DNA of 64,000 nt from Octopus sinensis (GCF_006345805.1 NC_043014.1:6386001-6450000); one strand, 5' to 3'; counted from the stretch's first letter, positions 1 through 61,789 are shown. Program-made: numbers and translations. The notes: generated from the sequence alone by a model not told the origin.

Positions 1-990
1 TTAAATAAGTACCAGTTACGTACTAGGGTCGATATAATCGAATTAATCCGTTTGTCTGTCCTTGTTTGTCCCCTCTGTGTTTATCCCCTTGTGGCAGTAA
101 AGAAATAGGTATTTCGTCTGTCTTTATGTTCTGAGTTGAAATTGTGCCGAGGTCGGCTTTGCCTGTCATCCTTTCGGGGTCGATTAAATAAGTACCAGTT
201 ACGTACTAGGGTCGATATAATCGAATTAATCCGTTTGTCTGTCCTTGTTTGTCCCCTCTGTGTTATCCCGTTGTGGGCAGTAAAGAAACAGGTATTTCGT
301 CTGTCTTACGTTCTGAGTTCAAATTCTGCCGAGGTTGACTTTGCCTGTCATCCTTTCGGGGTCGATTAAATAAGTACCAGTTACGTACTAGGGTCGATAT
401 AATCGAATTAATCCGTTTGTCTGTCCTTGTTTGTCCCCTCTGTGTTTATCCCCTTGTGGGCAGTAAAGAAATAGGTATTTCGTCTGTTTTTATGTTCTGA
501 GTTGAAATTGTGCCGAGGTCGGCTTTGCCTGTCATCCTTTCGGGGTCGATTAAATAAGTACCAGTTACGTACTAGGGTCGATATAATCGAATTAATCCGT
601 TTGTCTGTCCTTGTTTGTCCCCTCTGTGTTTATCCCCTTGTGGGCAGTAAAGAAATAGGTATTTCGTCTGTCTTTATGTTCTGAGTTGAAATTGTGCCGA
701 GGTCGGCTTTGCCTGTCATCCTTTCGGGGTCGATTAAATAAGTACCAGTTACGTACTAGGGTCGATATAATCGAATTAATCCGTTTGTCTGTCCTTGTTT
801 GTCCCCTCTGTGTTTATCCCATTGTGGGCAGTAAAGAAATAGGTATTTCGTCTGTCTTTACGTTCTGAGTTCAAATTCTGCCGAGGTCGGCTTTGCCTGT
901 CATCTTTTTGGGGTCGATAAATTAAGTACCAGTTGCATACTGGGGTCGATCTAATCGACTAGCTCCTTCCTCCAAAATTTCGGGCCTTGT
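1..990 (+). repeat. Tandem array of a 183-184 bp SINE 3' segment (~5 units)
   Basis: Unit junctions (aaatag|gtatttcgtc) at 109, 292, 475, 659, 843. The unit matches the body of the dispersed SINE at 12290-12522. Confidence 0.9.
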
Positions 991-1715: not shown

Positions 1716-2097
1716 GTTAATGTATTCGATTCTGCCCCCTTCCGTTGCCAATAAACTGCGACACAACAAACCGGTAGATGCTCTGAAATACGAAGACGTT
1801 ACGATTATGTTCAGCGGAATTGATGGATTTAGTAAATTCTGCGCCGAAAACTCCGATGCGCGCGGTGCTATGAAAATTGTGAAATACCTCAACGATATCT
1901 ACACCAGGTTTGATGTCCTCCTCGATCCAAGAGTCAACCCGGACGTGTACAAAGTGGAAACGGTCGGGGAGAAGTACATGGCTGTGAGCGGTTTGCCAGA
2001 GTTGTGTGAGACCCATGCGAAGTGTATAGCCCACCTTGCGCTCGATCTCATGGACATATCACATGAACTCAGTGACCCCTGTGGCAACCCGATGGTG
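1716..2097 (+). CDS. GUCY1B1: Soluble guanylate cyclase beta-1-like, internal exon (catalytic domain N-half)
   Basis: ttcag acceptor before 1716, gtgagt donor at 2098. Encodes [16 protein letters not shown]...[11 protein letters not shown]...[17 protein letters not shown]...IAHLALDLM, matching the sGC beta-1 motifs LLYSVLPPSVANELRH, FSGIVGF and KVETVGDKYM. Confidence 0.93.
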
Positions 2098-2989
2098 GTG
2101 AGTTTGCTATTGTTGTTGTTGTTGTTGTTGATGTGGTGGTGGTGGTGGTGTTGATGATGATGTTGATAATGGTGATAATGGTGACAGTGATGACGATGAT
2201 GATGGTGATGATTATGACGACAGCGACGATGACGGTAATAATAATGATGATAGTGATGATGATGATGATGATGACCATCATCAGCATTATCATCATCATG
2301 TTTTAGTTCTATTGCAGTTATCATTCTTGCTAATGGTGGTGGTGGGGGCGGTTACAGTGGTGATGGTGGAGGCGGCGGTGGCGGTTGTAGTGGTGGTGGT
2401 GGTGGTTTTCGTGGGTGGTGGTGGTGGTCGTCGTCGTCATAGTGGTAGTGGTAGTGGTCGTCGTCGTCGTCGTCGTTACGACCAACACTGATCAAACGCG
2501 AAGCCATATTGAATTCCTTTTATCCAGGCTCTAGGATAACACAATCTTGTTTTAACGGAGAGATGAAAATGATATTTGGCTGTTATTTCTAGCTTGTTGA
2601 GTGACCAAGCCAATTGTTGCTTAATTCCAAGTCAAATTTGATCTCAATTGACCTAGGATCAAAGGCTTTACAGATAAAAATCCGCTTCCTTCCCATCCCC
2701 ATTTTTTCAGTCATTGTCAAATCTGTTCTCTTCGAAAGACCTTAGAATCCGATTTCAGCTGCGGTTTCCCGCAGGATGTACCAAAAACATTTGGCTTTGT
2801 GGGCCAGATCGAAGCGTAAACAAAAATCTCATCGATTGGATAAAAACAGTTATTCGTAAAATCCCTGTACATTAAGAAGAACGAAGTAAATGGAAAATGA
2901 GAAGGGGCGGCGCTGTGTACATTATAACAACTCTATTAAAATGATGAAAGTAGAGTGTGCGAAGTAACAGCAAATTGTATGTGGTTATG

Positions 2990-12253: not shown

Positions 12254-12640
12254 ACGTGGAGGCGCAATGGCCCAGTGGTTAGGGCAGTTTAAGGCGGCGA
12301 GCTGGCAGAAACGTTAGCATGCCGGGCGAAATGCTTAGCGGTATTTCGTCTGCGTTACGTTGTGAGTTCAAATTCCGCCGAGGTCGACTTTGCCTTTCAT
12401 CCTTTCGGGGTCGATAAATTAAGTACCAGTTACGCACTGGGGTCGATATAATCGACTTAATACCTATGTCTGTCCTTGTTTGTCTCCTCTGTGTTTAGCC
12501 CCTTGTGGGTAATAAAGAAATAGGTTAGGGCAGTTACGATTCCCAGACCGGGCCTGGTGTGTGTTTATTGAGCGAAAACACCTAAAGCTCCACGAGTCTC
12601 CGGCAGGGGGTGTTGGCGACTCCTGTTGTACTCTTTTGCC
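12254..12640 (+). mobile_element. tRNA-derived SINE (host of the nested insertion)
   Basis: cgtggaggcgcaatggcccagtggttagggc head; resumes cgattcccagaccgggc after the insert. Confidence 0.8.
12290..12522 (+). mobile_element. SINE nested in another SINE, with 13-bp TSD
   Basis: ggttagggcagtt at 12277-12289 and 12523-12535. Confidence 0.85.
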
Positions 12641-13140: not shown

Positions 13141-13384
13141 CTTCCTGTCCATCACAAAATCGCAGACTGAGCTTTCTTTTTATTTATTTCTGTTTTTTGT
13201 TTGTTGAGTACTTTTTCACTAATTAACTAATTACTTTTTTATCACTTATTAGTTTCATCATATTTCGACAGGAAGAACTATTGCCAAATTTTCTCTAATT
13301 CTTATTTGACCTGGTTCAAATATGTCACGTGGTTACAATGCTTTCGTTCGAGGCAGTCGACGCTCGTTTTCTCTAGCAACCAAC

Positions 13385-13404
13385 ATGGTGACGACGACGA
13401 CGAC

Positions 13405-13435
<31 letters not shown>

Positions 13436-13469
13436 ATATCTGTGATGATTCTTCCATGCTCGTCACTCA
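13385..13469 (+). CDS. Ig-family gene 1, exon 1 (signal peptide MVT5M9IISVMILPCSSL)
   Basis: ATG at 13385 (in-frame upstream ATG at 13322), phase-1 gtaagt donor at 13470. Conserved at the same relative position upstream of all three Ig exons. Confidence 0.75.
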
Positions 13470-13579
13470 GTAAGTTCAGATTAAAAACAACAAATTTATT
13501 TCTTCAACATTTTCTCTCCCTTCTCTCGCACTTACTCTCTCCTTTTACTGTTTCTTTCTCTGCCACGCTCTTACTCATC

Positions 13580-14411: not shown

Positions 14412-14960
14412 GAGCTGGCAGAAGCGTTAGCACGCCGGGCGAAATGCTTAGCGGTATTTCGTCTACCGCTATGTTGTGAGTTCAAATTCCGCCGAGCTCG
14501 ACTTTGTCTTTCATCCTTTCGGTCGATAAATTAAGTACCAGTTACGCACTGGGGTCGATATAATCGACTTAATCCGTTTGTCTGTCCTTGTTTGTCCCCT
14601 CTGTGTTTAGCCCTTTGTGGGTAGTAAAGAAATAGGTATTTCGTCTACCGCTATGTTGTGAGTTCAAATTCCGCCGAGCTCGACTTTGCCTTTCATCCTT
14701 TCGGTCGATAAATTAAGTACCAGTTACGCACTGGGGTCGATATAATCGACTTAATCCGTTTGTCTGTCCTTGTTTGTCCCCTCTGTGTGTAGCCCCTTGT
14801 GGATAGTAAAGAAATAGGTATTTCGTCTGCCGTTACATTCTGAGTTCAAATTCTGCCGAGGTCGACTTTGCCTTTCATCCTTTCGGGGTCAATTAAATAA
14901 GTACCAGTTAGGCACTTAATCCCTTTGTCCTTGTTTGTCCCCTCTATGTTTAGACCCCTG
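14412..14960 (+). repeat. SINE with tandemly triplicated 182-bp 3' segment
   Basis: Head gagctggcagaa...cttagcg followed by units starting at 14454, 14636, 14818. Confidence 0.88.
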
Positions 14961-16574: not shown

Positions 16575-16907
16575 ATCGTGTTGAAATGACAAGCCTAAAA
16601 CCATTCGAAGGATTTGGGGAAGATGGACCAACTCAAATGAATATAACATGTCACCTTGAAGCAGAAGACTTATCATTCTTCAGACTCAGACGTAACAATG
16701 AAGTCGTTGTTGATATTGGTTTCCACGATGGTATGGGGTTTTTTGAACTTGTTCGTGCTCTGAATGGTTTCGACTGCAACTTACCGCAATCGAGAACAAT
16801 TAATGGAGTATTAAAATGCTGGAAAGAAAATCTAGATTGCGCTGATGCAGGATCCTATACGTGTGAGATATCGGATGCAAAGAGGTCCAAATCAAGGATG
16901 CTAAAAG
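16575..16907 (+). CDS. Ig-family gene 1, exon 2 (V-like Ig domain)
   Basis: ctag acceptor, gttaat donor, 333 nt, phase 1-1. B-strand Cys (NITC) and D.GSYTC F-strand motif. Confidence 0.85.
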
Positions 16908-18085: not shown

Positions 18086-18427
18086 TGAAATCTTTTGTCA
18101 AAAGGCTTGACCATATTAATACACCTTTAGAGACGAAGGAGGAGAAGAAGGAGGAGAAGAAGGTGTCTACCTTCAGCTGTTTGGTATATGCTTCTCCAGA
18201 TGCTGACAAAACTGTCACCTTTAGATGGACTGTAAAACATAAGATTAAAAACGCTAAACCACAGATGACAGACAAGAAAATACTTCTTCCGAAAACTGAC
18301 CAACATTGCGTACCAGTACAGTCGCTATTTAAACACGCGGTAACTGATGAAGACAAAAATGGAACAAGTATCTCATGTTCGGCATTTGGGAGAACACTTT
18401 CAGAAGACGTGAATATCTACGGTGCAA
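18086..18427 (+). CDS. Ig-family gene 1, exon 3 (C-like Ig domain)
   Basis: ttttctctacag acceptor, gtaggc donor, 342 nt, phase 1-1. Cys...Trp...Cys pattern (FSC, TFRW, ISC). Confidence 0.8.
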
Positions 18428-19137: not shown

Positions 19138-19257
19138 GATCTGGCAGCCCCATTTCTGCTCTACTACATACAGCATGGTTTTCTGTCTCCAGACTTTCTC
19201 TTCTCTTTCTGGCTCTTGCAAGTTGCCGCTAGCATCATCCCGTTTTTGCTCCAGTAA
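19138..19257 (+). CDS. Ig-family gene 1, exon 4 (hydrophobic/GPI-signal-like tail)
   Basis: ttttttgtctttacag acceptor, phase 1. As written it reads RSGSPISALLHTAWFSVSRLSLLFLALASCR* (stop 19230-19232). One extra T versus gene 2; removing it gives ...WFLSPDFLFSFWLLQVAASIIPFLLQ* ending 19257. Confidence 0.65.
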   Translation, partial: DLAAPFLLYYIQHGFLSPDFLFSFWLLQVAASIIPFLLQ

Positions 19258-20206: not shown

Positions 20207-23200
20207 TTTGATACTTTGATACTTTGATAGGTTTCGGCCATTATTGGCCCAAGCCATGTCTAACTTAATAGCACAACCTGGTGAAGTCTTTCAAGTCAGA
20301 ATTTGGGCACTATGGCCCACTCAAGTAGAGAGTTATTGTTTACAGAGACATATCCGGGTGTAGGGGGTTTATCCGGGATTTCTTGAAGGAATCTGTCCAA
20401 AGACTTCTTGAACCTATAGGGTCAGTTTCTGTTTTAATGTGTTTTGGTGTAATGTTAAAGAGAGCGGGGCCAATTGAGGTGAAATAATTGTGCCGTATTG
20501 TTGTTATGAGATGAGAGTACGATTTTTGTTTTGGCGGATGGCACGGGGCCCAATCCTTGGATGTACCTTAAAGGTGATGCCAACATCATTGGGCAATGCT
20601 GATGGAATATTTTCCACATCATGCAGATGATGTAGCGCTCACGACGACGTTGGAGAGAATAAAGTTTTAGCTTTTCTAGTCGACCCCAATAGTCGAGGCC
20701 TGTCATGCCATCTATCTTTTTTGTGATTGCCCTTTGAGGTGCTTCAACTTTTATGATACCTTGTATTGTGTGGGTAGACCACAGTGGACAACAGTATTCA
20801 AGGTGGGGTCGGGCAAAAGTGGAGAAGAGAAGGATAATGGTGTGGATATCTCTCGACTGGAAAGTTCTGAGAATCCAGGAACACATTCTGCGGGCCATGT
20901 CAACTTTGGTGTTTATATGAGTGGCCCAGCTTATGTTGTTGTCCACAATTACTCCCAAGTCTCTGATGTTGTTGGACGCCGCGAGAGTTTCACCTGAAGG
21001 AAGGGAGTATGGGAGTTTCAGGGCATCCTCTTTTCCAAAGTGGATTAACTCAAATTTATCCTCGTTCAGCAGCATATTGTTTTTTTCTGCCCATTGGATA
21101 ACAGCCAGTAGATCTGACTGAAGGCATGTCCGGTCACTCGCCTCATTTATGACCTTCTGTAGCTTGGATCATCTGCAAGATTTTTATGTTGCTGTGCTTG
21201 ATGATGTCATTAATGTCATTAATGTAAATGATAAAAAGAAGTGGGCCCAGCACAGTGCCTTGCGGAACGCCACTACTGACTTTGGCTGGGCTTGATTTTA
21301 CCCCTTCAATTACAACATGTTGAGATCTGTCTGTCAGGAAACACTTGATCCATTTCAGTAACTTTCCAGAGACACCAATGTTGGATAGTTTTTTCAATAG
21401 GATCTTGTGATCGACCCTGTCGAAGGCCTTACTGAAATCAAGGTAGATGACATCGGTGTTGGAGCCCTCTCCCAAAGCTCTCAAAATGTCATCAAAGTGA
21501 TGCAGGAGCTGCGTTAGGCAGTCCCTTCCATTACGGAACCCATGTTGGTTGGAGATCAGCCGTCTGTTGCTTTCCAGAAATTGGGTTATTCGAGATCTCA
21601 CCACCCTCTCAAATACCTTGATGATATGAGAGGTGAGTGAGCTCAAACGGTAGTTCACTGCAAGGGACTTGTTTCCCTTTTTGAAAACTGGGACAACAGA
21701 CTGGGACAGAAGGTTTTTTGGAATATAGCCAGCATCCAGTGAGTTTCTCCACAGATTAGCAAGGAGAGATGCAAGTTGGTGTCGACACACCTTCAGGACA
21801 CAAGCAGGGAACCTATCGGGGCCTACTGCTGAATTGTGTTTTATTTCGGTTATCGCCGCTAAGACATCAGGGGCACTAAACGTTATGTCCGATATAGTGT
21901 GTTGGGGGTTGACATCACTGATACAGCCCAGATCGGCCATATCAGGATTGCTGAAAACAGAGCAGTATTGTTTCTGCAGTATCTCGGCCATGGATTTGGC
22001 ATTATCTTGGAGAGTGCCAGTTTCATCAATTAGAGGGCCAACAATGGAGACAGTGACCCTGCGTTTCCTCGCAAATGAAAAGAACACTTTATGGTTGAGT
22101 TTGATTTTTTCAATGGCCCACTTCTCCTCAGCCGATCATTGGTTATTGATGAGGGTCTTCATGCATTGTTGGAGGTTATATTTTTTGGATTCAAGCAGTG
22201 CGATAGCCGTCGAATGTGTGTGTTGCTGTTGGCAGTACTTTAGTTTGTTAATTTTTTTGTTTGTTCTTTTTATTTTTCTGATAATGGTTTTTCTGTTTTG
22301 GGGGATTCTGCACTTTTTGTTCACAGGTCTTGGTGGGGAGTGTTTTGCACATATGTCTGTGACGGTGTCTACAAAGATCTGCCAAGATGTTTTATGGTTG
22401 GTGGAGATGTGTGTATGTGTAAAGGACCAGTCAACATGTGATAGCTCGTTCCTGATTGCATCCCAGTTGGCATTATGGAGATCCATGTTGTCAAATTGGG
22501 GGGGAGGGAGGTCACTAGGATTAGCTTTCGGCTGGTGGAATTCATGTTACAGAGAACCATGTCATGGTCTGAAAGAAGGGTTTTTCCACTGTAACGTTAT
22601 GTATAGTGTTAGTGTCGTTACTAAACACTAGGTCCAAAATGTTCTGATGTCTGTTGGTGCAAGGACAAGTTGGGACAAGAAAAACTCATTCGTAAAGTCG
22701 AAAAGTAACTCTGCTGCTTCTTTGTCAGCGGTTGAGGCGGGAGTGCTTGGTTTCAAACAGTTTGTAGTCAGTCAACACAGGGTAGATTGAAGTCTCCCAT
22801 CATGAGTATGTTGCTAGAATGGCACTGTTGAATAAAGCACTTAATGCTGTTGAGGCATCTTTAAAGCACAGTATGGGTGTTTGGGGCGGCTATAGAGCCC
22901 AATTATGTCTGGTCATTGGCTTTGTTGTGCACGGTGACTGATTCACAGTAGCCGTTGGAGAATATACTATTTCCATCTGCCGTAAACGAATCATGCAGGA
23001 AAATGGCAGTTCCACCCTTCCTCCTGCCGATACGATCCGCGCGGATGGTTGTGAAATTCTTCACTCTCACTTCGGCTTCCAAGTGGGAGTTGTCAAGGTG
23101 GGTCTCAGTGAGAATGAAGAAAGGGATGTGGTGTGGATGGTTACCAACCCAGTCTTCAATGAATTGGACCTTCCATTTTTGTGCATTGATGGAAGGGCTG

Positions 23201-25071: not shown

Positions 25072-26008
25072 ATAATATATATATTATATATATATATATA
25101 TGAAAAAACAAGTCAAAAATAGAAAATGCTAAGATAATTTTATAAGTGAATCTCTCAGTACGGTTTTCGGTCATTTTGAGACCTTTTCAACTGTACGATT
25201 AAATAATTAAATTTAGAAAATTAGAAGAAAAGTTTTTTTAAAAGAATATTTCTATAGTAGTGTTCAGATATAAGTAGCATCTGCCTTTCTCTGACTCCCT
25301 TGTTTGCCACTTGTGTGTTCGAGGTCGTTGTGAGTTCTTGGTAGGGTAGGTGAAGAATAAGGATGCTGATGTGGAGAGGGTGGGGAAATCTGGGATGCCT
25401 TGATGGTCGTATTTTGAATGGTCAGTGGCTGACAGCAGTCGCAGTTCAATTCAGGAATTGTTTATGGAATTTTGCGTAGGCGTTATACTGAAAGACATTA
25501 GTGACAAAGTTAAGGGGTAGAAGGTGGAGAAGTAGAAGAAGAAGATGACGATGTTGATGATGATATGATGAAGAAGAAGAAAAGAAGAAGAAGAAGAAGG
25601 AGAAGGAGAAGATGATGGTGATGATGGTGGTGATGATGATGACCGATGATGATGATAATGATGATGATGAAGAGAAGAGGAAGAAAAAGAAAAAAAACAG
25701 AGAAGGGAGAATATGATTGGGTGAAAGTATAGCTGTGATGGGGCTGATTAGTAATGGATTTATGGAGTGTAATGTTTGTGTGTGTATATATTTCTTTTAT
25801 TCTAAAGAAAATCTCTTTATTACAAAATACAGGCCACTTCTTAACGGGTCTACGACAAACAATTAATATACCTCACTTTAGAATAAAGAAATTATACACA
25901 TATAAAATTATCTTAGCATTTTCTATTTTTGACTTTTTTTTTATATATATCAACTCGTGTGTTCCTTTCCACCCTCATATATATATATATATATTATATA
26001 GATATAGA

Positions 26009-26156
<148 letters not shown>

Positions 26157-26569
26157 ATATATATATATTTACGGTTATATTTAGTTGTATGCCCTTTACT
26201 GTATTGTCTAACTTAGTTCTCAGGAGAAAGACCGATTAAACTGATGCCACCGTCCGAGTGATCAGTCGGGTTTTTCTCACATCTGCAAAGCTGTAAATAA
26301 TGCAAATCGAAACCAAACTGTTAATACAAATAAATATATATTCTACGAACGTGCTGAGTGTTCATTTTCTTTCATTTTTAAAACTTATCTGTAAATTCGT
26401 ACATGCATCTGTGTTTGACATATTTATAACAGATCCTACACCACTGACGGCAACATGTGATACGCCTTGGAAGTCCGAAATCTGGTGATTCTCAGACAAT
26501 TCTAAACGAGTAGCTTTGTGGCGTAGAAGAAAGCTGGGCTTCTGAAGACGTCTAAGATTCTCCCCATCT

Positions 26570-27311
26570 CTCTCTCTCACGCTCTCTCTCTCTCTCTCTC
26601 TCATGGTCTCTCTCACGCTCTCTCTCTCTCACGTTCTCTCTCTCTCTCACGCTCTCCTCTCTCTCTCTCTCTCACGCTCTCTCTCTCACTCTCTCTCTCT
26701 CACGCTCTCTCTCTCTCTCACGCTCTCTCTCTCACGCTCTCTCTCTCTCTCACGCTCTCTCTCTCTCTTACGGTCTCTCTCACGCTCTCTCTCTCTCATG
26801 CTCTCTCTCTCTCACGCTCTCTCTCTATCTCTCTCTCATGGTCTCTCTCACGCTCTCTCTCTCTCACGCTCTCTCTCTCTCAGGCTCTCTCTCTCACGCT
26901 CTCTTTCTCTCTTTCTCTCTCTCTCTCTCTCTCACACGCTCTCTCTCTCACTCTCTCTCTCTCACGCTCTCTCTTACGCTCTCTCTCTCACGCTCGCTCT
27001 CTCTCACGCTCGCTCTCTCTCACGCTCGCTCTCTCTCACGCTCTCTCTCTCACGCTCTCTCTCTCACGCTCTCTCTCTCACGCTCTCTCTCACGCTCTCT
27101 CTCTCACGCTCTATCTCTCTCTCCGCTCTCTCTCTCACCGCTCTCTCTCTCACGCCCTCTCTCTCTTCACGTTTCTAGCTCTCTCTCTCTCACGCTCTCT
27201 CTCACGCCGCTCTCATCTCACGCCCTCTCTCTCTCTCTCACGTTCTCTCTCTCTCTCTCTCTCACGCTCTCTCTCTCTCTCATGCTCTCTCTCTCTCTCA
27301 CGCACTCTCTC

Positions 27312-27365
<54 letters not shown>

Positions 27366-27368
27366 CTC
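26570..27368. repeat. Compound (CT)n microsatellite periodically interrupted by CACG
   Basis: Repeating ctctctctcacg units. Confidence 0.9.
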
Positions 27369-27674: not shown

Positions 27675-30029
27675 TGCTATTCTTGTGGAAATAGACAGGG
27701 AGTGACCGCAGTTGCTAACACAGAGAAAGTCTAAACAGAAATGCCAGAATAGTTTATGCCAGATTTAAACTTTTTATTTGTCATGGTCTTGAAGTTTTGA
27801 GCAGTCAAAATATTCTTCGGGATCTTTTCGGTTTGAACGGCAGTTTTTTCTAACGGTGTCATATGAAATTGTCACCCATGATTATGACCTTAGTATCGAT
27901 CTAATGCATTTCAATCTGTTTTAGGGTTAGGGTTAGTTAGGGTTACGGTTGAGGTTAGGGTTAGGGGTGGGGGGAAAGGTACCTTTTTTCTTCAGAAATG
28001 TAAATAAATCCAATCTGTTTCATAAACGAGGGACATTTTCATACGGCAGAGAATGTTTTCATTTCAATAGACGTCATTGATTGGTTGAAATTGCAGAAAT
28101 TGAAGAAAAAGAACAACAAATATTTTACAGACTATAGAATTTTCTCAATAAAGCCAGGAGAAAAAGTTGTTTTATAAACACATTCTACCAGTATACGAAG
28201 TTTAAAAGTGTTTAGTTACGTGGAAATTATTTTTAAAAACTGCCGTTCAAACCGAAAAGGTCCATTGTTCGCTTTCATACAATATATATTTTCCGTTAGG
28301 TTTTCGTATCTTCTTTTTCTAATAGCCAATAATGAAAAATAGTTGAATATTTCGGTCTGTAAGGAATTCATTTCGGAAGTTTTTTCCTTGGTCTTATGAT
28401 TTTGTGCAGAAGTGTAGGTAATATCCATAATCGGTTTGAAATGAGAAAATTCGATCATAATCCATGGCATGGAATTTTGGACGTTACCAGTTCCAGTTTT
28501 GAACAGAGAAGGAATGAGGGTTGCATAGGGATATTAAACACTAGTCAGAAAGAAAGACAGACAAGAGTAGATATATACCAGTCATTACAATGGGGGTATG
28601 CTTATTGAAAAAGGTTGAGGGATGCATCTATATAGACAGATAGATAAGGAGATGAAAAATAGCAACGTCAGATATTGTCGTCCTTTAAGTGACCACCAAA
28701 GCTGGCCAGAGTTGGCAAAAGTGAGAGGGAAGAATATCCTCGATAACTGTATTATATATCTATATATGACGGGTTTCCGCACAGTTTCTGTCGAGCAAAT
28801 TCACTGAGAAGTCGGGTGGGCCAGGTCTATCGTGGAATACGCTCATCCAAAGTGCTGCATGGTGATACTGGACCAGAAAACACGTGTTTTCAAATTGAGC
28901 ATCTTAAGAACATATCTATTCCTGCGTGTTAGCCAAACTTGTGCGTGCGTGCGTATGCATGCGTGTGTGTGTGTGTGTGTGTGCGTGCGTGCGTATGCAT
29001 GCGTGTGTGTGTGTGTATGTGTTTGTGTGTGTGCGCACGCACATAACAGTGTGATTGTGTGTGTAAATATTATAATAAATCAAATGACCGCAAATCGAAA
29101 TAGGAGACGATATGATTTATAAGTTTTAAAAAAGCGTGCAACAAATCAACCACCCCACCCCCACACACCACCATACACACACACACTTCTTTTTACAGAT
29201 TTAATGATATATTTGCAAAGAATCCCGCATTTTCACGGTTTCGCTGTTTTCACATTCCCAAAGCTGAATGTTTCGAATCCAGAAACGCGGTTCACTTACT
29301 TTGGAACAATTTCTCTTCTCTTATTCGAATTCCAAAGAGATTTTCTTGAAGAATTTAGCAGCGTTTTCTAAATTCAAAATACTCAGTTTTTTTGGTAACT
29401 TACTGAATTAGCAAAAGCAGAGATACTTTGCTGAAACAATTTCATACATTTAAATACTTAAAACACAACTCCTTGGTTTATATATATATATATAAGAATA
29501 TTTATGTGTGTGTGTGTGTATGACGATAAAAGCATCTTCTGTGTTGCTCCCGGAATAGTGAAAGTGAAGGTAAATATATGAAATGTACTTCTCTTTTTTC
29601 GTTTTTTTTCATTTTTGTGGGGCAGGGTGTTCTTACACCTTCAACTCCTTTATTTTAAATTTGCATTCTTCCGGTTTTTAATTTAATGTTAAATGTCTGT
29701 GTGTGAGTTTTTGTAAATGGGGGTGAGAGTGTTAGTGCACGTGTGCATGTATGTGTATGTATTAGTGTGTGTATGAGTCTGTGTGTGTGTGTATGTGTGT
29801 TTGCGCGTGTATGCGGGAGGTTTATAAACCCAGCGGAAGTTTTTGGAATAGCTATGCAAAAAATAATTGGATGAGGATTTTTTCTCCTTGGATCTTTTGT
29901 TTCTTTTTCGTTTATTTTAGCCTCTTTTGTGTTTCACAAAACAGGAATTAAGATTCTGCAAGAATTTCTCTTCTTCAAAAATGTCAATACTTTTAAATTT
30001 TCTCTTCACTGCTCCAGTTCAGCATTCAA

Positions 30030-30793: not shown

Positions 30794-32293
30794 AATGTAT
30801 GTATATATATATATATATATATGTGTATATATATATATATACACGGCGAATGTAGAGACGGACATCTCTACGGTAATGGAGAGCCATCATGTTTGAAAGC
30901 TTTAATTCGTCATTGTTAACTTCATTTGATATTTCCCTAGTCGAAGAAGAGGTTTTGTTCCTGCTTTTGCAGCCGGAGGGTTTCTACAAAAAGCCCTTAA
31001 TATTGGATCAGAAGGCAACTGTACCCAGCCTTTATTTTTGTTTACCCCCATTTTTCCCAGTTATGTATTCCCCAGAATCCCGATTATTCTCTAATTCTGT
31101 CCGTTCCTCTTATACTTTTTCTTGTCCTTCATTCATTTATTCACACTCAAACTGTCACAATTTCTTATTTAACTGCCCCTGACTTAAACAGTCTTCGCTT
31201 TTGTTAATTTCTAACCCTAACCCTTTGCCCTGAGACAATTGGCTTCATTTTCCTCTCCTTCTCTCACTCACACTTGATCCGAACTATTTAATTTCCGACT
31301 CTAAGTCACTCAGCCCAATTTTTCTCACACACTAACTCATCATTTCTTAGCCTCTATCTTCTACGTATTGTGTTTCTCCTCTCAAATCTAGGTCCTCCTT
31401 CTCTTCTTGCGTGATATCTGAATATTCACATAAATAAAAGTTGATATTCTGGATAAATGCATTTAAAATATCAACTTTCGATGCTGCAATTATTCCGATA
31501 TTATTCGTGTTCGTCGTACCTTTATTCAGATTTTTGTACAATATCAGAACAGTCAGATTAGAACAAGGAAACAATTTGTTTCTTTATAGCTTGATGTATC
31601 ACCCTCGTTATTCTCATCCACTCCCCCTATCCTCATCACCATTTGATGTCCCTTTTTATATGATGGCATGGATTGGACGGTTTATCAGGGGCTGGTAAGT
31701 CAGAGGAGTGTGTCATACACCAATGTCTACATTACAATAGTTTCTACAAGTGGATGCTCTGCCTTACTCCAACCACTTTACAAAGTATATTGACGTATTT
31801 GTTGTGGCACCATCTCTAGTGGGGTCACCAATTCTCTGCAAGACAAGGTCCCTCAACGGATTGTCGTAAACCATACATCACTTTCTTAATTATTCTTTAT
31901 AAAAGCAATAATAAAACTTAATACTGATAGGGCACAGAAAGTTTGTCTAAAGCCAGCTGGAGGCGGTGTCCTCCTGGAGCTACAAACTACAGTAGCATCC
32001 CCCCTTAGGGGTTAGCCATATTTAAATGGCAAATATACGTCTTTATAAAATGTAATTTTGAAATAATTTTCTCATTTCACATGAGCTTTCATTTAATTCT
32101 TTCTGTTTTATTTGTTGAGTACTTTTTCATTAATTAACTAATTAATTTTATCACTTATTAGTTTCATCATATTTAGACAGGAAGAACTATTGCCAAATTT
32201 TTTCTAATTCTTATTTGACCTGGCTCAAATATGTCACGTGGTTACAATGCTTTCGTTCGAGGCAGTCGGAGCTCGTTTTCTCTACCAACCAAC

Positions 32294-32323
32294 ATGGTGA
32301 CGACGACGACGACGACGACGATG

Positions 32324-32355
<32 letters not shown>

Positions 32356-32396
32356 GATGATTATATCTGTGATGATACTTCCATGCTCGTCACTCA
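32294..32396 (+). CDS. Ig-family gene 2, exon 1 (signal peptide MVT7M7VM5IISVMILPCSSL)
   Basis: Paralog of 13385-13469, phase-1 gtaagt donor at 32397, upstream in-frame ATG at 32231. Confidence 0.75.
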
Positions 32397-32504
32397 GTAA
32401 GTTTAGATTAAAAACAATAAATTTATCTCTTCAACATTTTCTCTCCCTTCTCTCGCACTTACTCTCTCTTTTTACTGTTTCTTTCTCTGCCATGCTCTTA
32501 CTCG

Positions 32505-33231: not shown

Positions 33232-35111
33232 GATAAAACGGTAAGATAACAAAGGAAAGAAAGAGACCTCAATATTATGTAAATAGAGGAAATTTATCTA
33301 TACAATATGTTACATTACTCGGTAGTCAAGATAAAACTCTGAGTTTCAGATGCCGAAGTGGAAATCCACAACCCCATCTCTTCGGTTATCTGGCTATTTG
33401 AAAACGTTATGAAAAAATACCGTTAAATAAAGGGAAATTACTCTGTTATTACTCTGCTTGCCTGCGTACTTACACATCGCTCGCATTTTTCGTCATAAAA
33501 ATTATGTAAAAATTATATAAAAATACATAAAAAATATATATAAAAAATATATAAAAATATATAAAAATATATAAATTCTTCTTGTTCTATCTGTTTTCTT
33601 TAGGGGACCAAAAACGTAACAGAAATTTAGTCACATGTGGGCATGATCCGAAAAGCTCTGTCCTTGTATTTAGACATGTAGTAGGGTCTAAGCTGCTTTT
33701 CCAGATAAGCCATCTCTCCATGTCGCATAGACCGCACCTTCCGCTGCCGTTAGTATAGGGCTTACATCTGGCCAAAATCTTCCATTGTATGTTATAATCG
33801 ACACCTTTATCTCTTAAAGACCAAATATGATTAGATAATTGTGTCGCTTTTCTTTTGTTTACGGTAGCTTCATATATGATGGTCTTGGACATGCAAGCTC
33901 CATTTAGCGGGCACAATTCTTTATTCCTGCATGAACAGCTGTTTTCTTCTTGTGTTTTTTGTATGTTATGTTTGATTATGTTTTTAAAATTGGTAGTTGA
34001 ACTAAAACTAATTTTTAAATTGTGTCTATTGAAGAGTTTCCCTATAAGTATAGTTAACTGGAAAATGTCTATCTATCAGTGCTAGGAAATATTTACCTAT
34101 ATTGAAGGCCACCTCGGGTGAGTAAGGGGGCGTAAACCAGATGACCTTCCTTTTTCTATTATTCCTTTTTCCTTACTGTTGGGCTAGTGATAGGTGTATA
34201 TTTTATTTTTTCGCTAAAACCACTATCTTTTAAAGCCTTATTATAAACTGGGGCAACGCTATTGAAGATGTCCTCATCAGATGAGAGGCTAGAAATCCTC
34301 TTACTAATATTTTTAACTAAATTTTTGAATACTATAGGGGGATGGCATGAACCTACATTAATATAACTTAGTCTATCATTGGGCTTCCTATAAGGCTTAT
34401 AAATATTCTTATTAAGATCTAAGGAAACGTCTAAGAAATTGACAACCGTCAGGTTAGTATCTATAGTTATACTAAGTCCGAAGTGTTTCATTAACTGGAT
34501 AATATCCTTCCTAAAACGATCTTGTGCTGGTCCATTTGTATTAGCTGTTAAGGCGAGGGTATCATCTTTGTAGATGGTGAAATGTACGTTAGGGAATGTC
34601 TTACCTAAGGTATCTAGGAGAAAAGGTCCAATTAGATCACAGATGCCTGCCCCATCATATGAACCCATGCTCACATCGAAAGCGCCCTCTGTGTCGGTGT
34701 TTTTTACCCACTTTGCGTTCTCACTGAAAAGTAATGTCTTTCTAGCATGGAAGATTATGTCCTTATCATTGGTACTAATTTCTATGAAGTCACTAGCGAA
34801 GATGAGGGCTTTATCTAGCAGTTCTTTAGAGATAGAGGCATAAAAATCAACAATATCGAATTGTGTAAACCTCGCTTTTTTCTTATTCTTAATAGCATTA
34901 AACCAGTCTACGACTAAATTTCCTCTATTTACATAATATTGAGGTCTCTTTCTTTCCTTTGTTATCTTACCGTTTTATCAATAAATCACCTCCCGGACGA
35001 CGTTATTTTCAACTAAGAGCAGATAACCGAAGAGATGGTGTTGTGGATTTCCACTTCGGCATCTGAAACTCAGAGTTTTATCTTGACTACCGAGTAATGT
35101 TACATATTGTA
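33232..35111 (-). mobile_element. Penelope-like element fragment (RT + GIY-YIG) with terminal inverted segments
   Basis: RT MGSYDGAGICDLIG...YKDD (34159-34674); nuclease region CPLNGAC...IIYEATV...LSNHIWSL...CGLC (33587-33916). Confidence 0.82.
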
Positions 35112-35754: not shown

Positions 35755-36087
35755 ATCATGTTGAAATGACAAGCCTAAAACCATTCGAAGGATTTGGGAT
35801 CAATGGACCAACTCAAATGGATATAACATGTCGTGTTCAAGCAGAAGACTTATTATTCTTCAGACTCAGGCGTAACAATGAAGTCGTTGTTGATATTGGT
35901 TTCAACGATGGTGAAGGAGTCTTTGAAGTAATTCATGACCTGAAAGGTTACTACTGCAACATGCCGCAATCGAGAAAGATTAATGCAGTATTAAAATGCT
36001 GGAAACCAAATCTAGATTGCGGTGATGTAGGATCTTATACGTGTGAGATATCGGATGCAAAGTGGTCCAATTCAAGGAGGCTAAAAG
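35755..36087 (+). CDS. Ig-family gene 2, exon 2 (V-like Ig domain)
   Basis: atag acceptor, gttaat donor, 333 nt, phase 1-1. DITC...DVGSYTC; about 76% aa identity to the gene 1 exon. Confidence 0.85.
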
Positions 36088-40788: not shown

Positions 40789-41103
40789 TGAAATCTTTTG
40801 TCAAAAGTCTTGATCTTATTAATCCAACTCAGAAGGAGGAGAATGAGACTACCCTCAGATGTTTGGCATATGCTTCATCACATGCTAACAAAACTGTCAC
40901 CTTTAGATGGACTGTAGCAAATAAAAACGCTAAACCACAGATAACAGACAAGAAAGTACCACTTCCGAAAACTGACGATCAGTGCATTCCAGTACAGTCG
41001 CTATATCAACACACGGTAACTGACAAAGACAGCGGTGAAACGATTATTGCATGTTCGGCATTTGGCACCATAATTGCAAAAGAAATGAACGACATTGGTG
41101 CAA
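40789..41103 (+). CDS. Ig-family gene 2, exon 3 (C-like Ig domain)
   Basis: ttttctctacag acceptor, gtaagc donor, 315 nt, phase 1-1. LRC...TFRW...IAC. Confidence 0.8.
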
Positions 41104-41697: not shown

Positions 41698-41816
41698 TAT
41701 CTGGCAGCACCACTTCTTCTCTACCAGATACAGCATGCTTTCTGTCTCCAAAATTTCCCTTCTCTTTCTGGTTCTTGCAAGTTGCCGCTAGCACCATCCC
41801 GTTTTTGCTCCAGTAA
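41698..41816 (+). CDS. Ig-family gene 2, exon 4 (GPI-anchor-signal-like tail)
   Basis: Phase 1. Reads ISGSTTSSLPDTACFLSPKFPFSFWFLQVAASTIPFLLQ*. Exons sum to 103+333+315+119 = 870 nt, a 289-aa open frame. Confidence 0.72.
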
Positions 41817-57635: not shown

Positions 57636-58449
57636 TATCTCCGGCGCCTAAATCTCCATATTTAATTTGCATTAAATTTTGGCAAGCTTACCTTTACCTA
57701 TTCTGAGTTACTTAAAAGGTGATGTTTCCTTCCATCTTTTCTATTTGGTGATACCTTTGTTTACCAGCCAAAGCGTTGTCACACTTTAAGGATTCTTATT
57801 TACCCATCCGTTATGATATTTCGATTGTTGTCCGTTGTTTCAAATACGTTTTAGCATTGTGGTATTAACCTTTTTTTAAACAATCACAAGAAATTTCGCT
57901 TTCACGTAAAACAACAATATTTTGTAGCCATTACCTATAATCTACTTCTAAAACACTTTAGTAGCTCTACTTAGCATCGTTTGCAAACTTATATATGTTC
58001 TATGATCGTTAAAATGCAACAACCTCCACAATAACCAGCCCTCAATTTGGTGTTCCGTTCCTAGGTTAATCGGAATCATAGATTTCCCTGCTACTCATAA
58101 ACCATCTCGCTTGTTCAATTCTTTGGTGAAAAAATACCACCAAAGCAACTTAAACCTTCCAAAAGGACGGGTTCACCTGCTAGTCCTTCATAAAAGCTAA
58201 TTTTAAAATATTTTTCTCATTTCCGATGAGACTATTTTTTATGATTATTATTATTTTTCTGTTTTGCTTATTTTGCACTTTTTCATTAATTAACTAATTC
58301 ATTTTATCATTAATTAGTTTCATCACATTTCGACACGAAAAACTATTGCCAAATTTTCTCTAATTCTTATTTGACCTCGATCAAATATGTCACGTGGTTA
58401 CAATGCTTCTGTTCGAAGCAGTCGGCGCTCGTTTTCTCTACCAACCAAC

Positions 58450-58531
58450 ATGGTGACGACGACGACGACGATGATGATGATGATGATGATGATGATTATA
58501 TCCGTGATGATTCTTCCATGCATGTCAGTCA
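58450..58531 (+). CDS. Ig-family gene 3, exon 1 (signal peptide MVT5M8IISVMILPCMSV)
   Basis: Third paralog, phase-1 gtaagt donor at 58532, upstream in-frame ATG at 58387. Confidence 0.75.
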
Positions 58532-58601
58532 GTAAGTTCAGATTAAAAACAACAAATATATTTCTTCAAGCTTTTCATTCCTTTCTCTCACCTCTTTCAA
58601 C

Positions 58602-60950: not shown

Positions 60951-61283
60951 ATCGTGTTGAAATGACAAGCCTAACGCCTTTCGATGGATTTGGGGACGAA
61001 GAACTAACCAGAATGGAAATTACATGTAACTTTGTAGCCAACAACTTAGGTTTCTTCAGACTCAGACGAAACGATGAAGTCGTTGTTGATATTGGTTTCC
61101 ACGAAGTTGTGGGAGTTTTTGAAGTCATCTATGCCGCGAAAGATTTCGGTTGCATCTTACCGCGAGTTGCAGCGACTAGAGGTGAATTGCATTGTTGGAA
61201 AAATAACTTGGATTGCAGAGATGTAGCATCTTATACATGTGAGATATCGAATGCAATCGAGTCGAATTCAAGGTTTCTCAAAG
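60951..61283 (+). CDS. Ig-family gene 3, exon 2 (V-like Ig domain)
   Basis: catag acceptor, gttaat donor, 333 nt, phase 1-1. EITC...DVASYTC; about 60% aa identity to gene 1. Downstream exons not found in the window. Confidence 0.85.
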
Positions 61284-61789
61284 GTTAATTTTGTTTCTTC
61301 TAAGGGAAAAATAGCACTACTACTACTACTACTACTACCACCCCAACAACAACTACAAACGCAATAAAATCTAATACAAACTACTAATACTAAAACATCA
61401 AATAATAATAATAATAATAATGATGATGATGATGATGATAATAATAATAATAAGTGGGGGAGCATCACAGCCATGTGTTGAGAGGGATTCTTTGGGGTTT
61501 GAATAATTCACCTCTGGAAACATGGGTGGTTCGTTCAACATCCTTAAACAACCCTTATTCAGGGACCCTTTCAGCGGAATGGGGTACTCGACCAGAAGAA
61601 AATTCTAACTGGGCCCCACCTGCAAGGTCATGTGCTGTTTATCTTGATATGAGATCACCATGTCACGCACATATGATCGTGATGCATGTGCCTAGTGCAC
61701 CCTTATCAGACGAGTAGTCATGATGGGTATACTGGGCTTCGTATATTTTACCCCAGTATCACTTTGAGGGCATGCACTGTTCTCTCACT

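What the first reader, a model, noticed from the sequence alone, without database searches (positions are those of the whole stretch)
13322..13469. Signal peptide made from a microsatellite: poly-Met hydrophobic core
Seen: exon 1 is an (ACG)n(ATG)n repeat read as MVT5M9IISVMILPCSSL, MVT7M7VM5IISV... (32294) and MVT5M8IISV... (58450). Length differences are always whole codons and a phase-1 donor follows. Inference: a GAT/GAC microsatellite was exapted as the h-region, so slippage tunes its length and each ATG is a potential alternative start. A 21-codon in-frame upstream extension (MSRGYNAFVRGSRRSFSLATN) is also open in all three copies.
Basis: partly seen in the sequence, partly recalled or inferred. 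Interest (0 to 1): 0.72.

Follow-up and report, generated by a model that had tools for sequence, protein, structure and literature searches.

The report
Poly-methionine microsatellite inside octopus signal peptide
Three tandem octopus genes for small antibody-like surface proteins begin with a secretion signal whose water-repelling core is partly a pure ATG (methionine) DNA repeat; this is a rare variant of the known "amino-acid repeat in a signal peptide", not a new kind of system.

Summary
The window is Octopus sinensis chromosome CM016876.1. Exon 1 of three tandem paralogues (13322, 32231, 58387) carries a compound coding microsatellite, (ACG)n(ATG)n. It reads T5M9, T7M7VM5 and T5M8, and a phase-1 donor follows. 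Five more copies were found outside the window and in O. bimaculoides. They differ only by whole codons.

The genes encode proteins with two Ig-like domains (AlphaFold pLDDT above 90; Foldseek hits butyrophilin and Fab chains) and a GPI-like tail, so an N-terminal ER signal peptide is expected. The Met run plus the fixed IIS/TVMIL/F segment gives an h-region of 13-16 residues, followed by P-C-S/T-S.

- **Origin.** Distant paralogues (about 30% identity) already have Met-rich cores such as LLMSMMVMTVMM, whose codons look like a decayed ATG repeat. The pure tract is an insert specific to this subfamily. It expanded inside an existing signal peptide; a foreign repeat was not recruited.
- **Start codon.** The 21-codon extension and its ATG are conserved across the family and are probably the real start. 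The "MV" ATG is absent in O. bimaculoides.
- **Concerted evolution.** Exon 1 groups by species, whereas the Ig exons group by orthology.
- **Untested.** "Tuning" by slippage and alternative starts remain untested.

Closest precedents are the CNDP1 (CTG)n leucine repeat and the CaV1.3 N-terminal poly-Met stretch.

The parts
13189..13321 (+). Conserved block of about 133 nt upstream of exon 1 (putative promoter and 5' UTR). It contains TTAATTAACTAATTA, TTATCAC and CAGGAAG. The last 113 nt are ATG-free in all 8 copies.
   Evidence: Alignment A1; pairwise differences of 6-18 per 129 nt across paralogues and species; ATG positions.
13322..13469 (+). Exon 1 (coding part) of copy 1, which is LOC118766831 / XP_036366553. 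It is 148 nt with a phase-1 donor A|GTAAGT at 13470.
   Evidence: The NCBI model P0001 is 100% identical across the exon 1-2-3 junctions.
13322..13384 (+). 21-codon N-terminal extension MSRGYNAFVRGSRRSFSLATN. It is the probable n-region, with net charge +4.
   Evidence: The ATG and frame are kept in 8 of 8 copies. A homologous M(M)SRGY..W.S..LP..LL extension is present in distant paralogues. pN/pS is 0.34-0.81.
13385..13390 (+). ATG GTG ('MV'), the second in-frame start in a strong context (CAACATGG). It corresponds to the MLL start of the short-signal relatives.
   Evidence: Present in 5 of 5 O. sinensis copies and replaced by CAG/TTG/CTG TTG in 3 of 3 O. bimaculoides copies.
13391..13405 (+). 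(ACG)5, the Thr run; a CpG-containing repeat at the n/h boundary.
   Evidence: ACG accounts for 43 of 48 run codons against 25 of 142 in the background. The five ACA and one ATG interruptions are CpG transitions; the ATA next to the Thr run in Obim_c needs two.
13406..13432 (+). (ATG)9, the Met run; the N-terminal part of the h-region.
   Evidence: h-region table.
13433..13469 (+). The non-repeat part of the h-region (IISVMIL), a helix-breaking P, and a c-region C-S-S with small residues at -3 and -1. The last base is the first base of the split Asn codon.
   Evidence: Aligns with ..TVMM / SPYTSA of distant paralogues.
16575..16907 (+). Exon 2 of copy 1: Ig-like domain 1, with C..CWK..DxxxYxC and phase 1-1.
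   Evidence: AlphaFold residues 51-160 form a beta-sandwich with pLDDT above 90.
18086..18427 (+). Exon 3 of copy 1: a KEEKKEEKK linker encoded by a 12-nt repeat at 18130-18163, plus Ig-like domain 2. The donor A|GTAGGC is at 18428.
19138..19232 (+). Exon 4 of copy 1: small residues (GARSGS), a spacer and the hydrophobic tail LSLLFLALASCR, then the stop codon. This is a GPI-attachment-like signal.
   Evidence: C-terminal helix 286-304 in the model.
32231..32396 (+). Exon 1 of copy 2. The tract at 32300-32359 is (ACG)7 (ATG)7 GTG (ATG)5, giving an h-region of 20 residues.
35755..36087 (+). Exon 2 of copy 2 (Ig-like domain 1), about 75-76% amino-acid identity to copy 1.
40789..41103 (+). Exon 3 of copy 2 (Ig-like domain 2).
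41698..41791 (+). Exon 4 of copy 2. It has a 1-nt deletion relative to the other four copies aligned, which shifts the frame of the hydrophobic tail. Either a likely pseudogene or an assembly error.
   Evidence: Alignment A3, column 103.
58387..58531 (+). Exon 1 of copy 3. The tract at 58456-58494 is (ACG)5 (ATG)8.
60951..61283 (+). Exon 2 of copy 3 (Ig-like domain 1). Exons 3-4 lie beyond the window end, at L002:42013 and L002:43158.

Best explanation
The tract is part of the ER signal-peptide exon of tandemly duplicated genes from an octopus-restricted family. The family encodes small cell-surface proteins with two Ig-like domains and either a GPI-type tail or a TM segment plus cytoplasmic tail.

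How it most likely works (inferred):
1. Translation starts at the conserved upstream AUG (Met1).
2. The 21-residue basic extension plus the polar Thr run forms an unusually long n-region.
3. The Met run plus the invariant IIS/TVMIL/F heptad forms a 13-16-residue h-region that engages SRP and Sec61.
4. P-C-S/T-S supplies the -3/-1 site for signal peptidase, so the whole repeat is removed from the mature protein.

Because the segment is discarded and only needs bulk hydrophobicity, it tolerates triplet slippage. A Met-rich core that already existed in the family, and is itself a decayed ATG-type repeat, became a pure compound microsatellite (ACG)n(ATG)n in this subfamily. ACG to ATG and ACG to ACA are the two CpG-deamination products, so the Thr run can feed the Met run.

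Tract length now changes faster than the flanks. The exon-1 module is kept alike among paralogues within each species by gene conversion, while the Ig exons diverge quickly.

Shown here: the sequence, the codon signatures, the family comparison, the folds and the trees. Inferred: which start is used, cleavage, and that length variation is nearly neutral within a permitted range.
For: **Sequence and copies.**

**Gene model.** The NCBI protein P0001 is 100% identical across the exon 1/2/3 junctions. All exons are phase 1.

**Extracellular product.**
- AlphaFold2 mean pLDDT is 81.8, with two beta-sandwiches (51-160 and 164-275) above 90. The N-terminal 49 residues are unstructured and there is a C-terminal helix at 286-304.
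- Foldseek top PDB hits are butyrophilin ectodomains, Fab chains and TCR (E about 2e-6).
- Relatives carry TM and cytoplasmic tails or GPI-like tails.

**Signal-peptide anatomy.** n-region charge is +3 or +4, h-region is 13-16 residues (20 in copy 2), followed by PCSS/PCTS.

**Family comparison.** 37 representatives were found. Distant members have LLMSMMVMTVMM-type cores and the MSRGY extension, or start directly at MLL. The T/M tract is an insert relative to them.

**Codon signatures.**
- ACG accounts for 43 of 48 codons in the Thr runs, against 25 of 142 in the background.
- 24 of 32 non-Met codons in distant h-regions are one step from ATG, against 176 of 753.
- Leu is CTG in 9 of 12 cases, against 8.5% in the background.

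**Concerted evolution.** The exon-1 module splits by species (95/93 support). Exons 2 and 3 split by orthology (100/99).

**Fast slippage.** c4 and the unplaced copy have 0/63 and 0/37 flank differences but carry M6 and M8.

**Extension coding-like.** pN/pS is 0.34-0.81, and conserved Arg is encoded by both CGT and AGA.

Against: - No signal-peptide or GPI predictor and no transcript or protein data were available. The n/h/c assignment and the cleavage site come from inspection.
- Pfam does not recognise the Ig domains at threshold (Ig_3, E=0.23).
- Met is only marginally hydrophobic on the translocon scale (values recalled from memory, used). The run may therefore contribute little beyond length.
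- The start codon is unresolved. The upstream non-coding block is as conserved as the extension. Relatives with short signals show the core works without the extension.
- All protein models are computational predictions that take the longest ORF.
- The copies are related and partly homogenised, so the p-values overstate significance.
- Only eight copies from two species were seen, and none are alleles.
Confidence: 0.7

Rival explanations
1. Short-signal reading. The transcript starts downstream of, or ribosomes skip, the upstream AUG. Translation begins at the 'MV' AUG (O. sinensis) or at the first AUGs of the Met run (O. bimaculoides). This gives an ordinary signal of about 18-27 residues, and the 21-codon 'extension' is a conserved 5' UTR.
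For: - Relatives with MLLAMMILMMASYTLA-type signals start exactly at the position of 'MV', with a homologous upstream frame that is open but has no ATG.
- The non-coding 133 nt upstream are as conserved as the extension.
- The MV AUG has the better context, CAACATGG.
- Every AUG inside the run has A at -3.
Against: - The upstream ATG is kept in 8 of 8 copies and in most distant paralogues, in frame, across codon-sized indels.
- pN/pS is below 1, with synonymous replacements at conserved residues.
- The MV ATG is absent in O. bimaculoides.
- The 113 nt before the upstream ATG are ATG-free in all copies, as expected of a 5' UTR that ends at the true start. This is weak evidence, P about 0.14 per copy.
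Confidence: 0.28
2. Adaptive tuning device. Slippage of the Met run is used to adjust h-region length. It could set secretion efficiency or switch between a cleaved signal and an uncleaved anchor. The array of AUGs provides regulated alternative starts.
For: - h-region lengths span 13 to 20 residues.
- In CNDP1 the number of leucines determines secretion efficiency.
- The annotated product of LOC118766832 carries T4M6 where the genome has T7M7VM5. This hints at length polymorphism.
Against: - No functional or population data are available.
- The seven copies other than c2 cluster at 13-16 residues, like relatives without a pure repeat (11-15).
- The only long outlier has a frameshifted last exon.
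- The signal is discarded, so near-neutral drift within limits explains the data equally well.
Confidence: 0.12
3. Literal exaptation. A pre-existing non-coding GAT/GAC microsatellite was captured into the first exon and became the hydrophobic core de novo.
For: - (GAT/TGA)n tracts are common nearby: 2152-2274, 25611-25670 and 61411-61452.
- The family-wide core has a degenerate ATG-repeat codon signature. An ancient capture at the origin of the family therefore cannot be excluded.
Against: - Distant paralogues have a complete Met-rich signal at the homologous position without a pure repeat.
- The pure tract sits as an insert between the conserved 'LL' position and the conserved ..(S/T)VM(I/M) segment.
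- This is in-situ expansion within this subfamily.
Confidence: 0.1
4. The hydrophobic segment is an uncleaved signal anchor, or exon 1 is an annotation or assembly artefact that is not used by the gene.
For: - The n-region is long and positively charged, and the hydrophobic run reaches 20 residues in copy 2.
- All models are predictions.
- One model is chimeric between copies and differs from the genome in the tract.
Against: - A helix-breaking P with small residues at -3 and -1 follows in every copy, and relatives have YTSA.
- The C-terminal GPI-like signal implies a luminal, processed ectodomain.
- The exon-1/exon-2 phase-1 architecture is conserved in every family member examined, across three species.
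Confidence: 0.05

Closest known systems
CNDP1 (carnosinase-1) signal-peptide leucine repeat encoded by a (CTG)n microsatellite
   Same: A pure trinucleotide repeat encodes a homopolymer inside the hydrophobic core of an ER signal peptide. Length changes in whole codons, and in CNDP1 the number of residues determines secretion efficiency (PMC5116900).
   Different: The residue here is Met (ATG, a single codon that is also the start codon), preceded by a Thr (ACG) run. Runs are longer (6-13 against 4-8). Variation is seen here between paralogues and species, not yet between alleles, and no functional data exist.
Leucine repeats in eukaryotic signal peptides (Labaj et al., FEBS J 2010; BMC Bioinformatics 2011)
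   Same: Single-amino-acid repeats located in signal peptides and conserved there.
   Different: That survey found enrichment for Leu only, with no trend for any other amino acid (PMC3124433). A Met run is therefore outside the described pattern.
CaV1.3 (CACNA1D) N-terminal poly-methionine stretch
   Same: A run of consecutive ATG codons at the 5' end of a coding region, conserved across species, which raises the question of which Met starts the protein (PMC3431584).
   Different: That stretch is at the cytoplasmic N-terminus of an ion channel and is not a targeting signal. Here the run is internal to a longer ORF and forms part of a hydrophobic core.
Gene families with a conserved signal exon and a fast-evolving mature region (e.g. 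conopeptide superfamilies; recalled from memory, not tested here)
   Same: The signal-peptide exon is far more alike among paralogues than the mature-protein exons, whose omega is 0.46-0.91.
   Different: Here the similarity follows species, which indicates concerted evolution. The products are IgSF surface proteins, not secreted peptides.
Butyrophilin-type IgV-IgC ectodomains (fold of the mature protein)
   Same: The best Foldseek matches cover both domains (8zjy_E, 9iik_C; E about 2e-6).
   Different: Sequence identity is 9-18% and TM-scores are 0.25-0.38 for the two-domain alignment. Pfam Ig models do not reach threshold. This is a resemblance of fold only.

Membership tests
ER (Sec/SRP-type) cleavable signal peptide | N-terminal position on a protein whose mature part is extracellular or luminal | tested here: met
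   The tract is in the first coding exon. The mature part is two Ig-like beta-sandwiches with N-glycosylation sequons and a GPI-like tail, and relatives have TM tails.
ER (Sec/SRP-type) cleavable signal peptide | Tripartite n (basic) / h (7-15 hydrophobic residues) / c (small residues at -3 and -1) organisation | tested here: met
   By inspection and simple scoring. n-region charge is +3 or +4 from Met1. The h-region is 13-16 residues (20 in copy 2), followed by P then C-S-S or C-T-S. No dedicated predictor was available.
ER (Sec/SRP-type) cleavable signal peptide | Demonstrated ER targeting and cleavage | not testable with these tools
   Needs a reporter assay or N-terminal sequencing.
Coding trinucleotide microsatellite (slippage-generated homopolymer) | A pure tandem run of one codon when synonymous codons exist | tested here: met
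   ACG accounts for 43 of 48 codons in the Thr runs, against 25 of 142 Thr codons in the Ig exons. Met has only one codon, so the Met run is uninformative on this point. TRF gives 100% matches.
Coding trinucleotide microsatellite (slippage-generated homopolymer) | Length variation in unit steps that outpaces point substitution in the flanks | tested here: met
   Eight copies have eight different tract compositions, all in frame. c4 and the unplaced copy have identical flanks but carry M6 and M8.
Coding trinucleotide microsatellite (slippage-generated homopolymer) | Allelic length polymorphism within a population | not testable with these tools
   The only hint is that XP_036366562 carries T4M6 where the assembly has T7M7VM5. 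The metagenome scan for other individuals found nothing.
Signal-peptide repeat polymorphism of the CNDP1 type | Repeat length alters secretion efficiency | not tested
Immunoglobulin superfamily | Ig beta-sandwich fold with a conserved Cys pair and core Trp | tested here: met
   AlphaFold domains have pLDDT above 90. Foldseek gives probability 1.00 to Ig-domain chains. C117, C131, C138, C146, Y144 and D140 are invariant, and C75 is nearly invariant.
Immunoglobulin superfamily | Match to a curated Ig sequence profile | tested here: not met
   Pfam Ig_3 gives E=0.23 and 12.4 bits against a cut-off of 30. Membership rests on fold only.
GPI-anchored protein | C-terminal small-residue omega region, a spacer, and a hydrophobic tail of about 12-20 residues at the very C-terminus | tested here: inconclusive
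   The pattern GARSGS..SVSRLSLLFLALASCR is present and is predicted helical. No GPI predictor was run.

The most novel reading that the evidence does not exclude
The ATG repeat is a maintained evolvability device. It would be both a slippage-adjustable hydrophobic core and an array of in-frame start codons. One promoter could then give long-n-region and short signal peptides, with different targeting efficiency or a cleaved-versus-anchored fate. Gene conversion of the signal exon would spread favourable lengths among fast-evolving Ig-type receptor paralogues.
Probability: 0.1. Interest if true: 0.7.

Novelty: new variant of a known kind. Interest (0 to 1): 0.42.

Why it matters
Signal peptides that contain amino-acid repeats are known, but the one systematic survey read here (PMC3124433) found enrichment for leucine only. 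A natural core built from 6-13 consecutive methionines has three useful properties:

1. It is a test case for how little hydrophobicity and how much length SRP and Sec61 and signal peptidase will accept.
2. Because Met has one codon, it is a coding repeat that cannot be "scrambled" by synonymous changes. It stays mutable as long as it stays Met.
3. Every repeat unit is also a potential start codon.

The family comparison gives a concrete picture of how such a tract arises. A Met-rich core seeds a microsatellite, and CpG decay converts ACG (Thr) units into ATG (Met). The comparison also shows the signal exon evolving in concert while the Ig exons diverge, which is of some interest for how lineage-specific receptor families evolve in cephalopods. 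None of this changes a general principle, so it is a well-documented curiosity.

Tried and rejected
1. **Transcript-derived fragments.** A search with the first 115 residues, meant to find fragments showing the 5' end or other tract lengths, gave 1 candidate and no hit.
2. **Other individuals.** An exact-pattern scan of metagenome contigs for the exon-1 start gave 0 hits.
3. **c4 exon contrast, withdrawn.** I first treated the O. sinensis copy c4 (L002:48918) and the very divergent exon 2 at L002:53537 as one gene. That would have given a dramatic contrast between exon 1 and exon 2. I rejected it because a 100-N assembly gap lies between them (L002:50988-51087). In O. vulgaris the orthologous exon 2 also has its own exon 1, MMSRGYVV.. 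(L006:10001).
4. **Haplotig test.** I asked whether the unplaced scaffold (L004) is a haplotig of c4, which would have made M6 and M8 alleles. Patchy identity of only 79-97% means this is not shown.
5. **GT-AG mini-intron.** I looked for one that could explain T4M6 in XP_036366562. There is no AG in the tract, and the only fitting deletion is bounded by CG..GG (reasoned).
6. **Conservation rate as a coding test.** The extension has 0-10 differences per 63 nt. This matches the non-coding block upstream, so it is uninformative.
7. **Literature.** Searches for poly-Met signal peptides and for the locus names found nothing specific.
8. **O. vulgaris orthologues of copies 1-3.** They are not in the protein collection, and the tools cannot fetch arbitrary coordinates of that assembly.

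Full report
**1. What is in the sequence**

The described sequence is present at the stated coordinates.
- Copy 1 has an ATG at 13322, 21 codons, then ATG GTG at 13385. It continues with (ACG)5 at 13391-13405, (ATG)9 at 13406-13432, then ATT ATA TCT GTG ATG ATT CTT CCA TGC TCG TCA CTC A|GTAAGT.
- Copy 2 (32231) reads T7 M7 V M5.
- Copy 3 (58387) reads T5 M8.

TRF calls (GAC)5.7 and (GAT)10, both 100% pure. The junction motif occurs three times, against 0.00 expected from shuffles. The window is very rich in microsatellites in general, and other (GAT/TGA)n tracts lie at 2152-2274, 25611-25670 and 61411-61452.

**2. Where it comes from and what the gene is**

The predicted product of exons 1-3 is 100% identical to XP_036366553 (LOC118766831, Octopus sinensis). 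The locus look-up places the window at CM016876.1:6386001-6450000 of GCA_006345805.1.

Copy 1 has four coding exons, all joined in phase 1: 13322-13469, 16575-16907, 18086-18427 and 19138-19232.

Pfam sees only sub-threshold Ig signals. An AlphaFold2 model built on a 23-sequence family alignment gives two confident beta-sandwich domains at residues 51-160 and 164-275, with pLDDT above 90. It also gives an unstructured N-terminal 49 residues and a C-terminal helix at 286-304. Foldseek against the PDB returns butyrophilin ectodomains, Fab chains and TCR chains at E about 2e-6.

The C-terminus (GARSGS...SVSRLSLLFLALASCR) has the form of a GPI-attachment signal. Some relatives instead carry a TM segment and cytoplasmic tail. 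The mature protein is therefore extracellular and must have an N-terminal ER signal.

**3. More copies**

Five further exon-1 copies were recovered:
- O. sinensis L002:48918, which is window coordinate 71148 (T8 M6).
- O. sinensis unplaced scaffold L004:899 (T8 M8).
- O. bimaculoides L005:10001 (T4 M4 I M).
- O. bimaculoides L005:20658 (T5 M T2 M8).
- O. bimaculoides L005:27594 (T4 I M4 I M).

All eight keep the upstream ATG TCA CGT GGT TAC..., an indel-free 21-codon frame and the phase-1 donor A|GTAAGT. All length differences are whole codons. That is what triplet slippage gives by itself, so it is compatible with coding constraint but does not prove it.

**4. It is a real microsatellite**

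Within the Thr runs, 43 of 48 codons are ACG. Only 25 of 142 Thr codons in the Ig exons of the same genes are ACG.

The five ACA interruptions and the one ATG interruption of the Thr runs are the two products of CpG deamination of ACG. The ATA at the Thr/Met boundary of Obim_c needs two such steps. This suggests, as an inference, that the CpG-rich Thr repeat decays into Met units that slippage can then amplify.

Interruptions of the Met runs are ATA (I), GTG (V) and ACG (T). None is AAG or AGG (K or R). The numbers are too small for a test.

**5. Signal-peptide anatomy**

Read from Met1, the peptide has these parts:
- An n-region of 27-31 residues with net charge +3 or +4.
- An h-region made of the Met run plus IIS/TVMIL/F. 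It is 13-16 residues long in seven copies and 20 in copy 2.
- A helix-breaking Pro.
- C-S-S or C-T-S, with small residues at -3 and -1.

On the Kyte-Doolittle scale the core is clearly hydrophobic (mean about 2.5). On the translocon scale, whose values I recalled from memory, Met is nearly neutral. The run therefore adds length more than driving force.

Copy 2, the outlier, has a 1-nt deletion in its last exon relative to the other four copies aligned. NCBI does not annotate it as a gene of its own. It may be decaying, or the assembly may be wrong there.

**6. The family comparison changes the interpretation**

A full HMMER scan found 37 representatives. Members at about 30% identity have, at the homologous position, Met-rich but non-repetitive cores:
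- LLMSMMVMTVMM
- LLMSMMMIAMM
- LLMTMMTIMLMIVMM
- LLIMMMIMIVTIMM
- MLLAMMILMMA
- LLLLLTMMMMMMK

In the family alignment the pure T/M tract is an insert specific to the subfamily of the window. The hydrophobic core was therefore not created by capturing a repeat. A repeat expanded inside an existing, already Met-rich signal.

The old cores also carry a triplet-repeat signature:
- 24 of 32 non-Met codons are one step from ATG (CTG, TTG, GTG, ATA, ATC, ACG), against 176 of 753 for the same amino acids in the Ig exons.
- Leu is CTG in 9 of 12 cases, against 8.5% in the background.
- 19 of 32 non-Met codons end in G, against 15% in the background.

These sequences share ancestry, so the nominal p-values (about 1e-9) are overstated. 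The pattern still describes a degenerate (ATG)n-like ancestral core.

**7. Which start codon**

It is more than that. An M(M)SRGY..G..W.S..LP..LL extension is present, in frame, in most distant paralogues despite codon-sized indels. pN/pS in the extension is 0.34-0.81, with synonymous replacements at conserved residues such as Arg CGT against AGA.

The "MV" ATG exists only in O. sinensis. The three O. bimaculoides copies have CAG TTG, TTG TTG and CTG TTG. This favours Met1.

Three points count against that reading:
- The 133 nt of non-coding sequence upstream are just as conserved as the extension.
- A second class of relatives starts directly at MLL, the position of "MV". Their upstream frame is recognisably homologous and open, but it lacks an ATG. 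The core therefore works without the extension.
- All models are longest-ORF predictions.

I put Met1 at roughly 0.65-0.7. Initiation at MV or in the run remains a live alternative or a minor route.

**8. Concerted evolution of the signal exon**

Exons 2 and 3 group by orthology across the two species:
- c3 with Obim_b.
- c1 and c2 with Obim_a.
- The unplaced copy with Obim_c.

Support is 100/99. Synonymous divergence is about 0.2 for orthologues and 0.3-0.5 for paralogues.

The exon-1 module, with the tract columns removed, splits cleanly by species (95/93; 92% of bootstrap trees). Species-specific states such as MV against xL and IISV against IITV are shared by all paralogues, and CSS against CTS by all but c3 (CMS). 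This points to gene conversion of the signal exon within each genome.

The Ig exons meanwhile evolve fast, with omega 0.46-0.91. The tracts still differ between copies whose flanks are identical. c4 and the unplaced copy have 0 of 100 flank differences but carry M6 and M8. Slippage therefore outruns both substitution and conversion.

**9. An unexplained hint of polymorphism**

XP_036366562 and XP_036366563 (LOC118766832 X1 and X2) begin at copy-2 exon 1, identified by its private Ser14, and continue with copy-3 exons 2-4. They carry T4M6 where the same assembly encodes T7M7VM5.

No canonical intron can be placed in the tract. The 30-nt difference may come from transcript evidence of another allele, or it may be a modelling artefact. 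I could not resolve this.

**10. Comparison with what is known**

- Single-residue repeats in signal peptides are documented, but a proteome-wide survey found enrichment for leucine only (PMC3124433).
- The best functional precedent is the CNDP1 (CTG)n leucine repeat, whose length determines secretion efficiency (PMC5116900).
- A conserved run of ATG codons at the start of a protein is known in CaV1.3 (PMC3431584), but it is not a targeting signal.
- I found no description of a poly-Met signal core or of this octopus family.

**11. Verdict**

This is a new variant of a known kind: an amino-acid repeat inside a signal peptide, here Met/ATG preceded by Thr/ACG. It arose by in-situ expansion in a family with ancestrally Met-rich signals and sits in an exon that evolves in concert. 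Functional "tuning" and alternative starts are untested. Interest is moderate.

Noticed in passing
window 32231-32396 joined to 60951 onward (NCBI LOC118766832; P0006/P0004): The annotated proteins join copy-2 exon 1 to copy-3 exons 2-4. They carry T4M6 where the same assembly encodes T7M7VM5, which is 30 nt fewer, and no canonical splice is possible inside the tract. This may reflect a shorter allele in the transcript evidence, or a model artefact.
   Followed up: partly
window ~41698-41791 (copy 2, exon 4): There is a 1-nt deletion relative to copies 1 and 3, the unplaced copy and an O. bimaculoides copy. It shifts the frame of the hydrophobic C-terminal tail. Copy 2 may be a pseudogene, or the assembly may be wrong there. 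It is also the copy with the longest, interrupted tract.
   Followed up: partly
window 13189-13530, 32100-32457, 58250-58589 and five loci outside the window: The exon-1 module (about 133 nt upstream, the exon and the start of the intron) groups by species, while exons 2 and 3 group by orthology. This indicates concerted evolution (gene conversion) of the signal exon. The Ig exons evolve fast (omega 0.46-0.91).
   Followed up: yes
window 13189-13321 and the same block before each copy: The upstream block is highly conserved and contains TTAATTAACTAATTA (homeodomain-type), TTATCAC (GATA-type) and CAGGAAG (ETS-type) motifs. The motif assignments were made by eye only.
   Followed up: no
window 1720-2100 (+), and up to ~23603: This is an exon of a soluble guanylate cyclase (Pfam Guanylate_cyc, 4e-26). 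According to the NCBI gene calls its CDS runs to about 23603. Copy 1 of the Ig gene therefore sits inside an intron of the cyclase gene on the same strand. The same neighbourhood is seen in O. bimaculoides (L005).
   Followed up: partly
window 18130-18163 (exon 3 of copy 1): A second coding repeat, (GAGAAGAAGGAG)2.8, encodes the KEEKKEEKK linker between the two Ig-like domains. The linker is shorter or different in the other copies.
   Followed up: no
L002:50988-51087 (window coordinate ~73218) and scaffold VCDQ01003523.1 (L004): A 100-N assembly gap follows the fourth exon-1 copy. Homology to O. vulgaris resumes exactly after the gap. The unplaced 33-kb scaffold carries a complete family member and may belong in or near this gap.
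   Followed up: partly
window 1-958, 12299-12525, 14453-14916: A 182-184-bp tandem satellite is present, with 5.2 copies at the window start and further arrays elsewhere. ARAGORN finds no tRNA in the window.
   Followed up: no
window 43276-44952 (-), 20455-22087 (-), 37523-38991 (+), 34159-34674 (-): These are retrotransposon reverse-transcriptase ORFs. The 558-aa ORF at 43276-44952 matches Pfam RVT_1 at 7e-31. They lie between and within the Ig-gene copies.
   Followed up: partly
window 27921-27966 and 26567-27368: An interstitial telomere-type repeat, (TTAGGG)8, lies near an 800-bp (TC)n tract.
   Followed up: no
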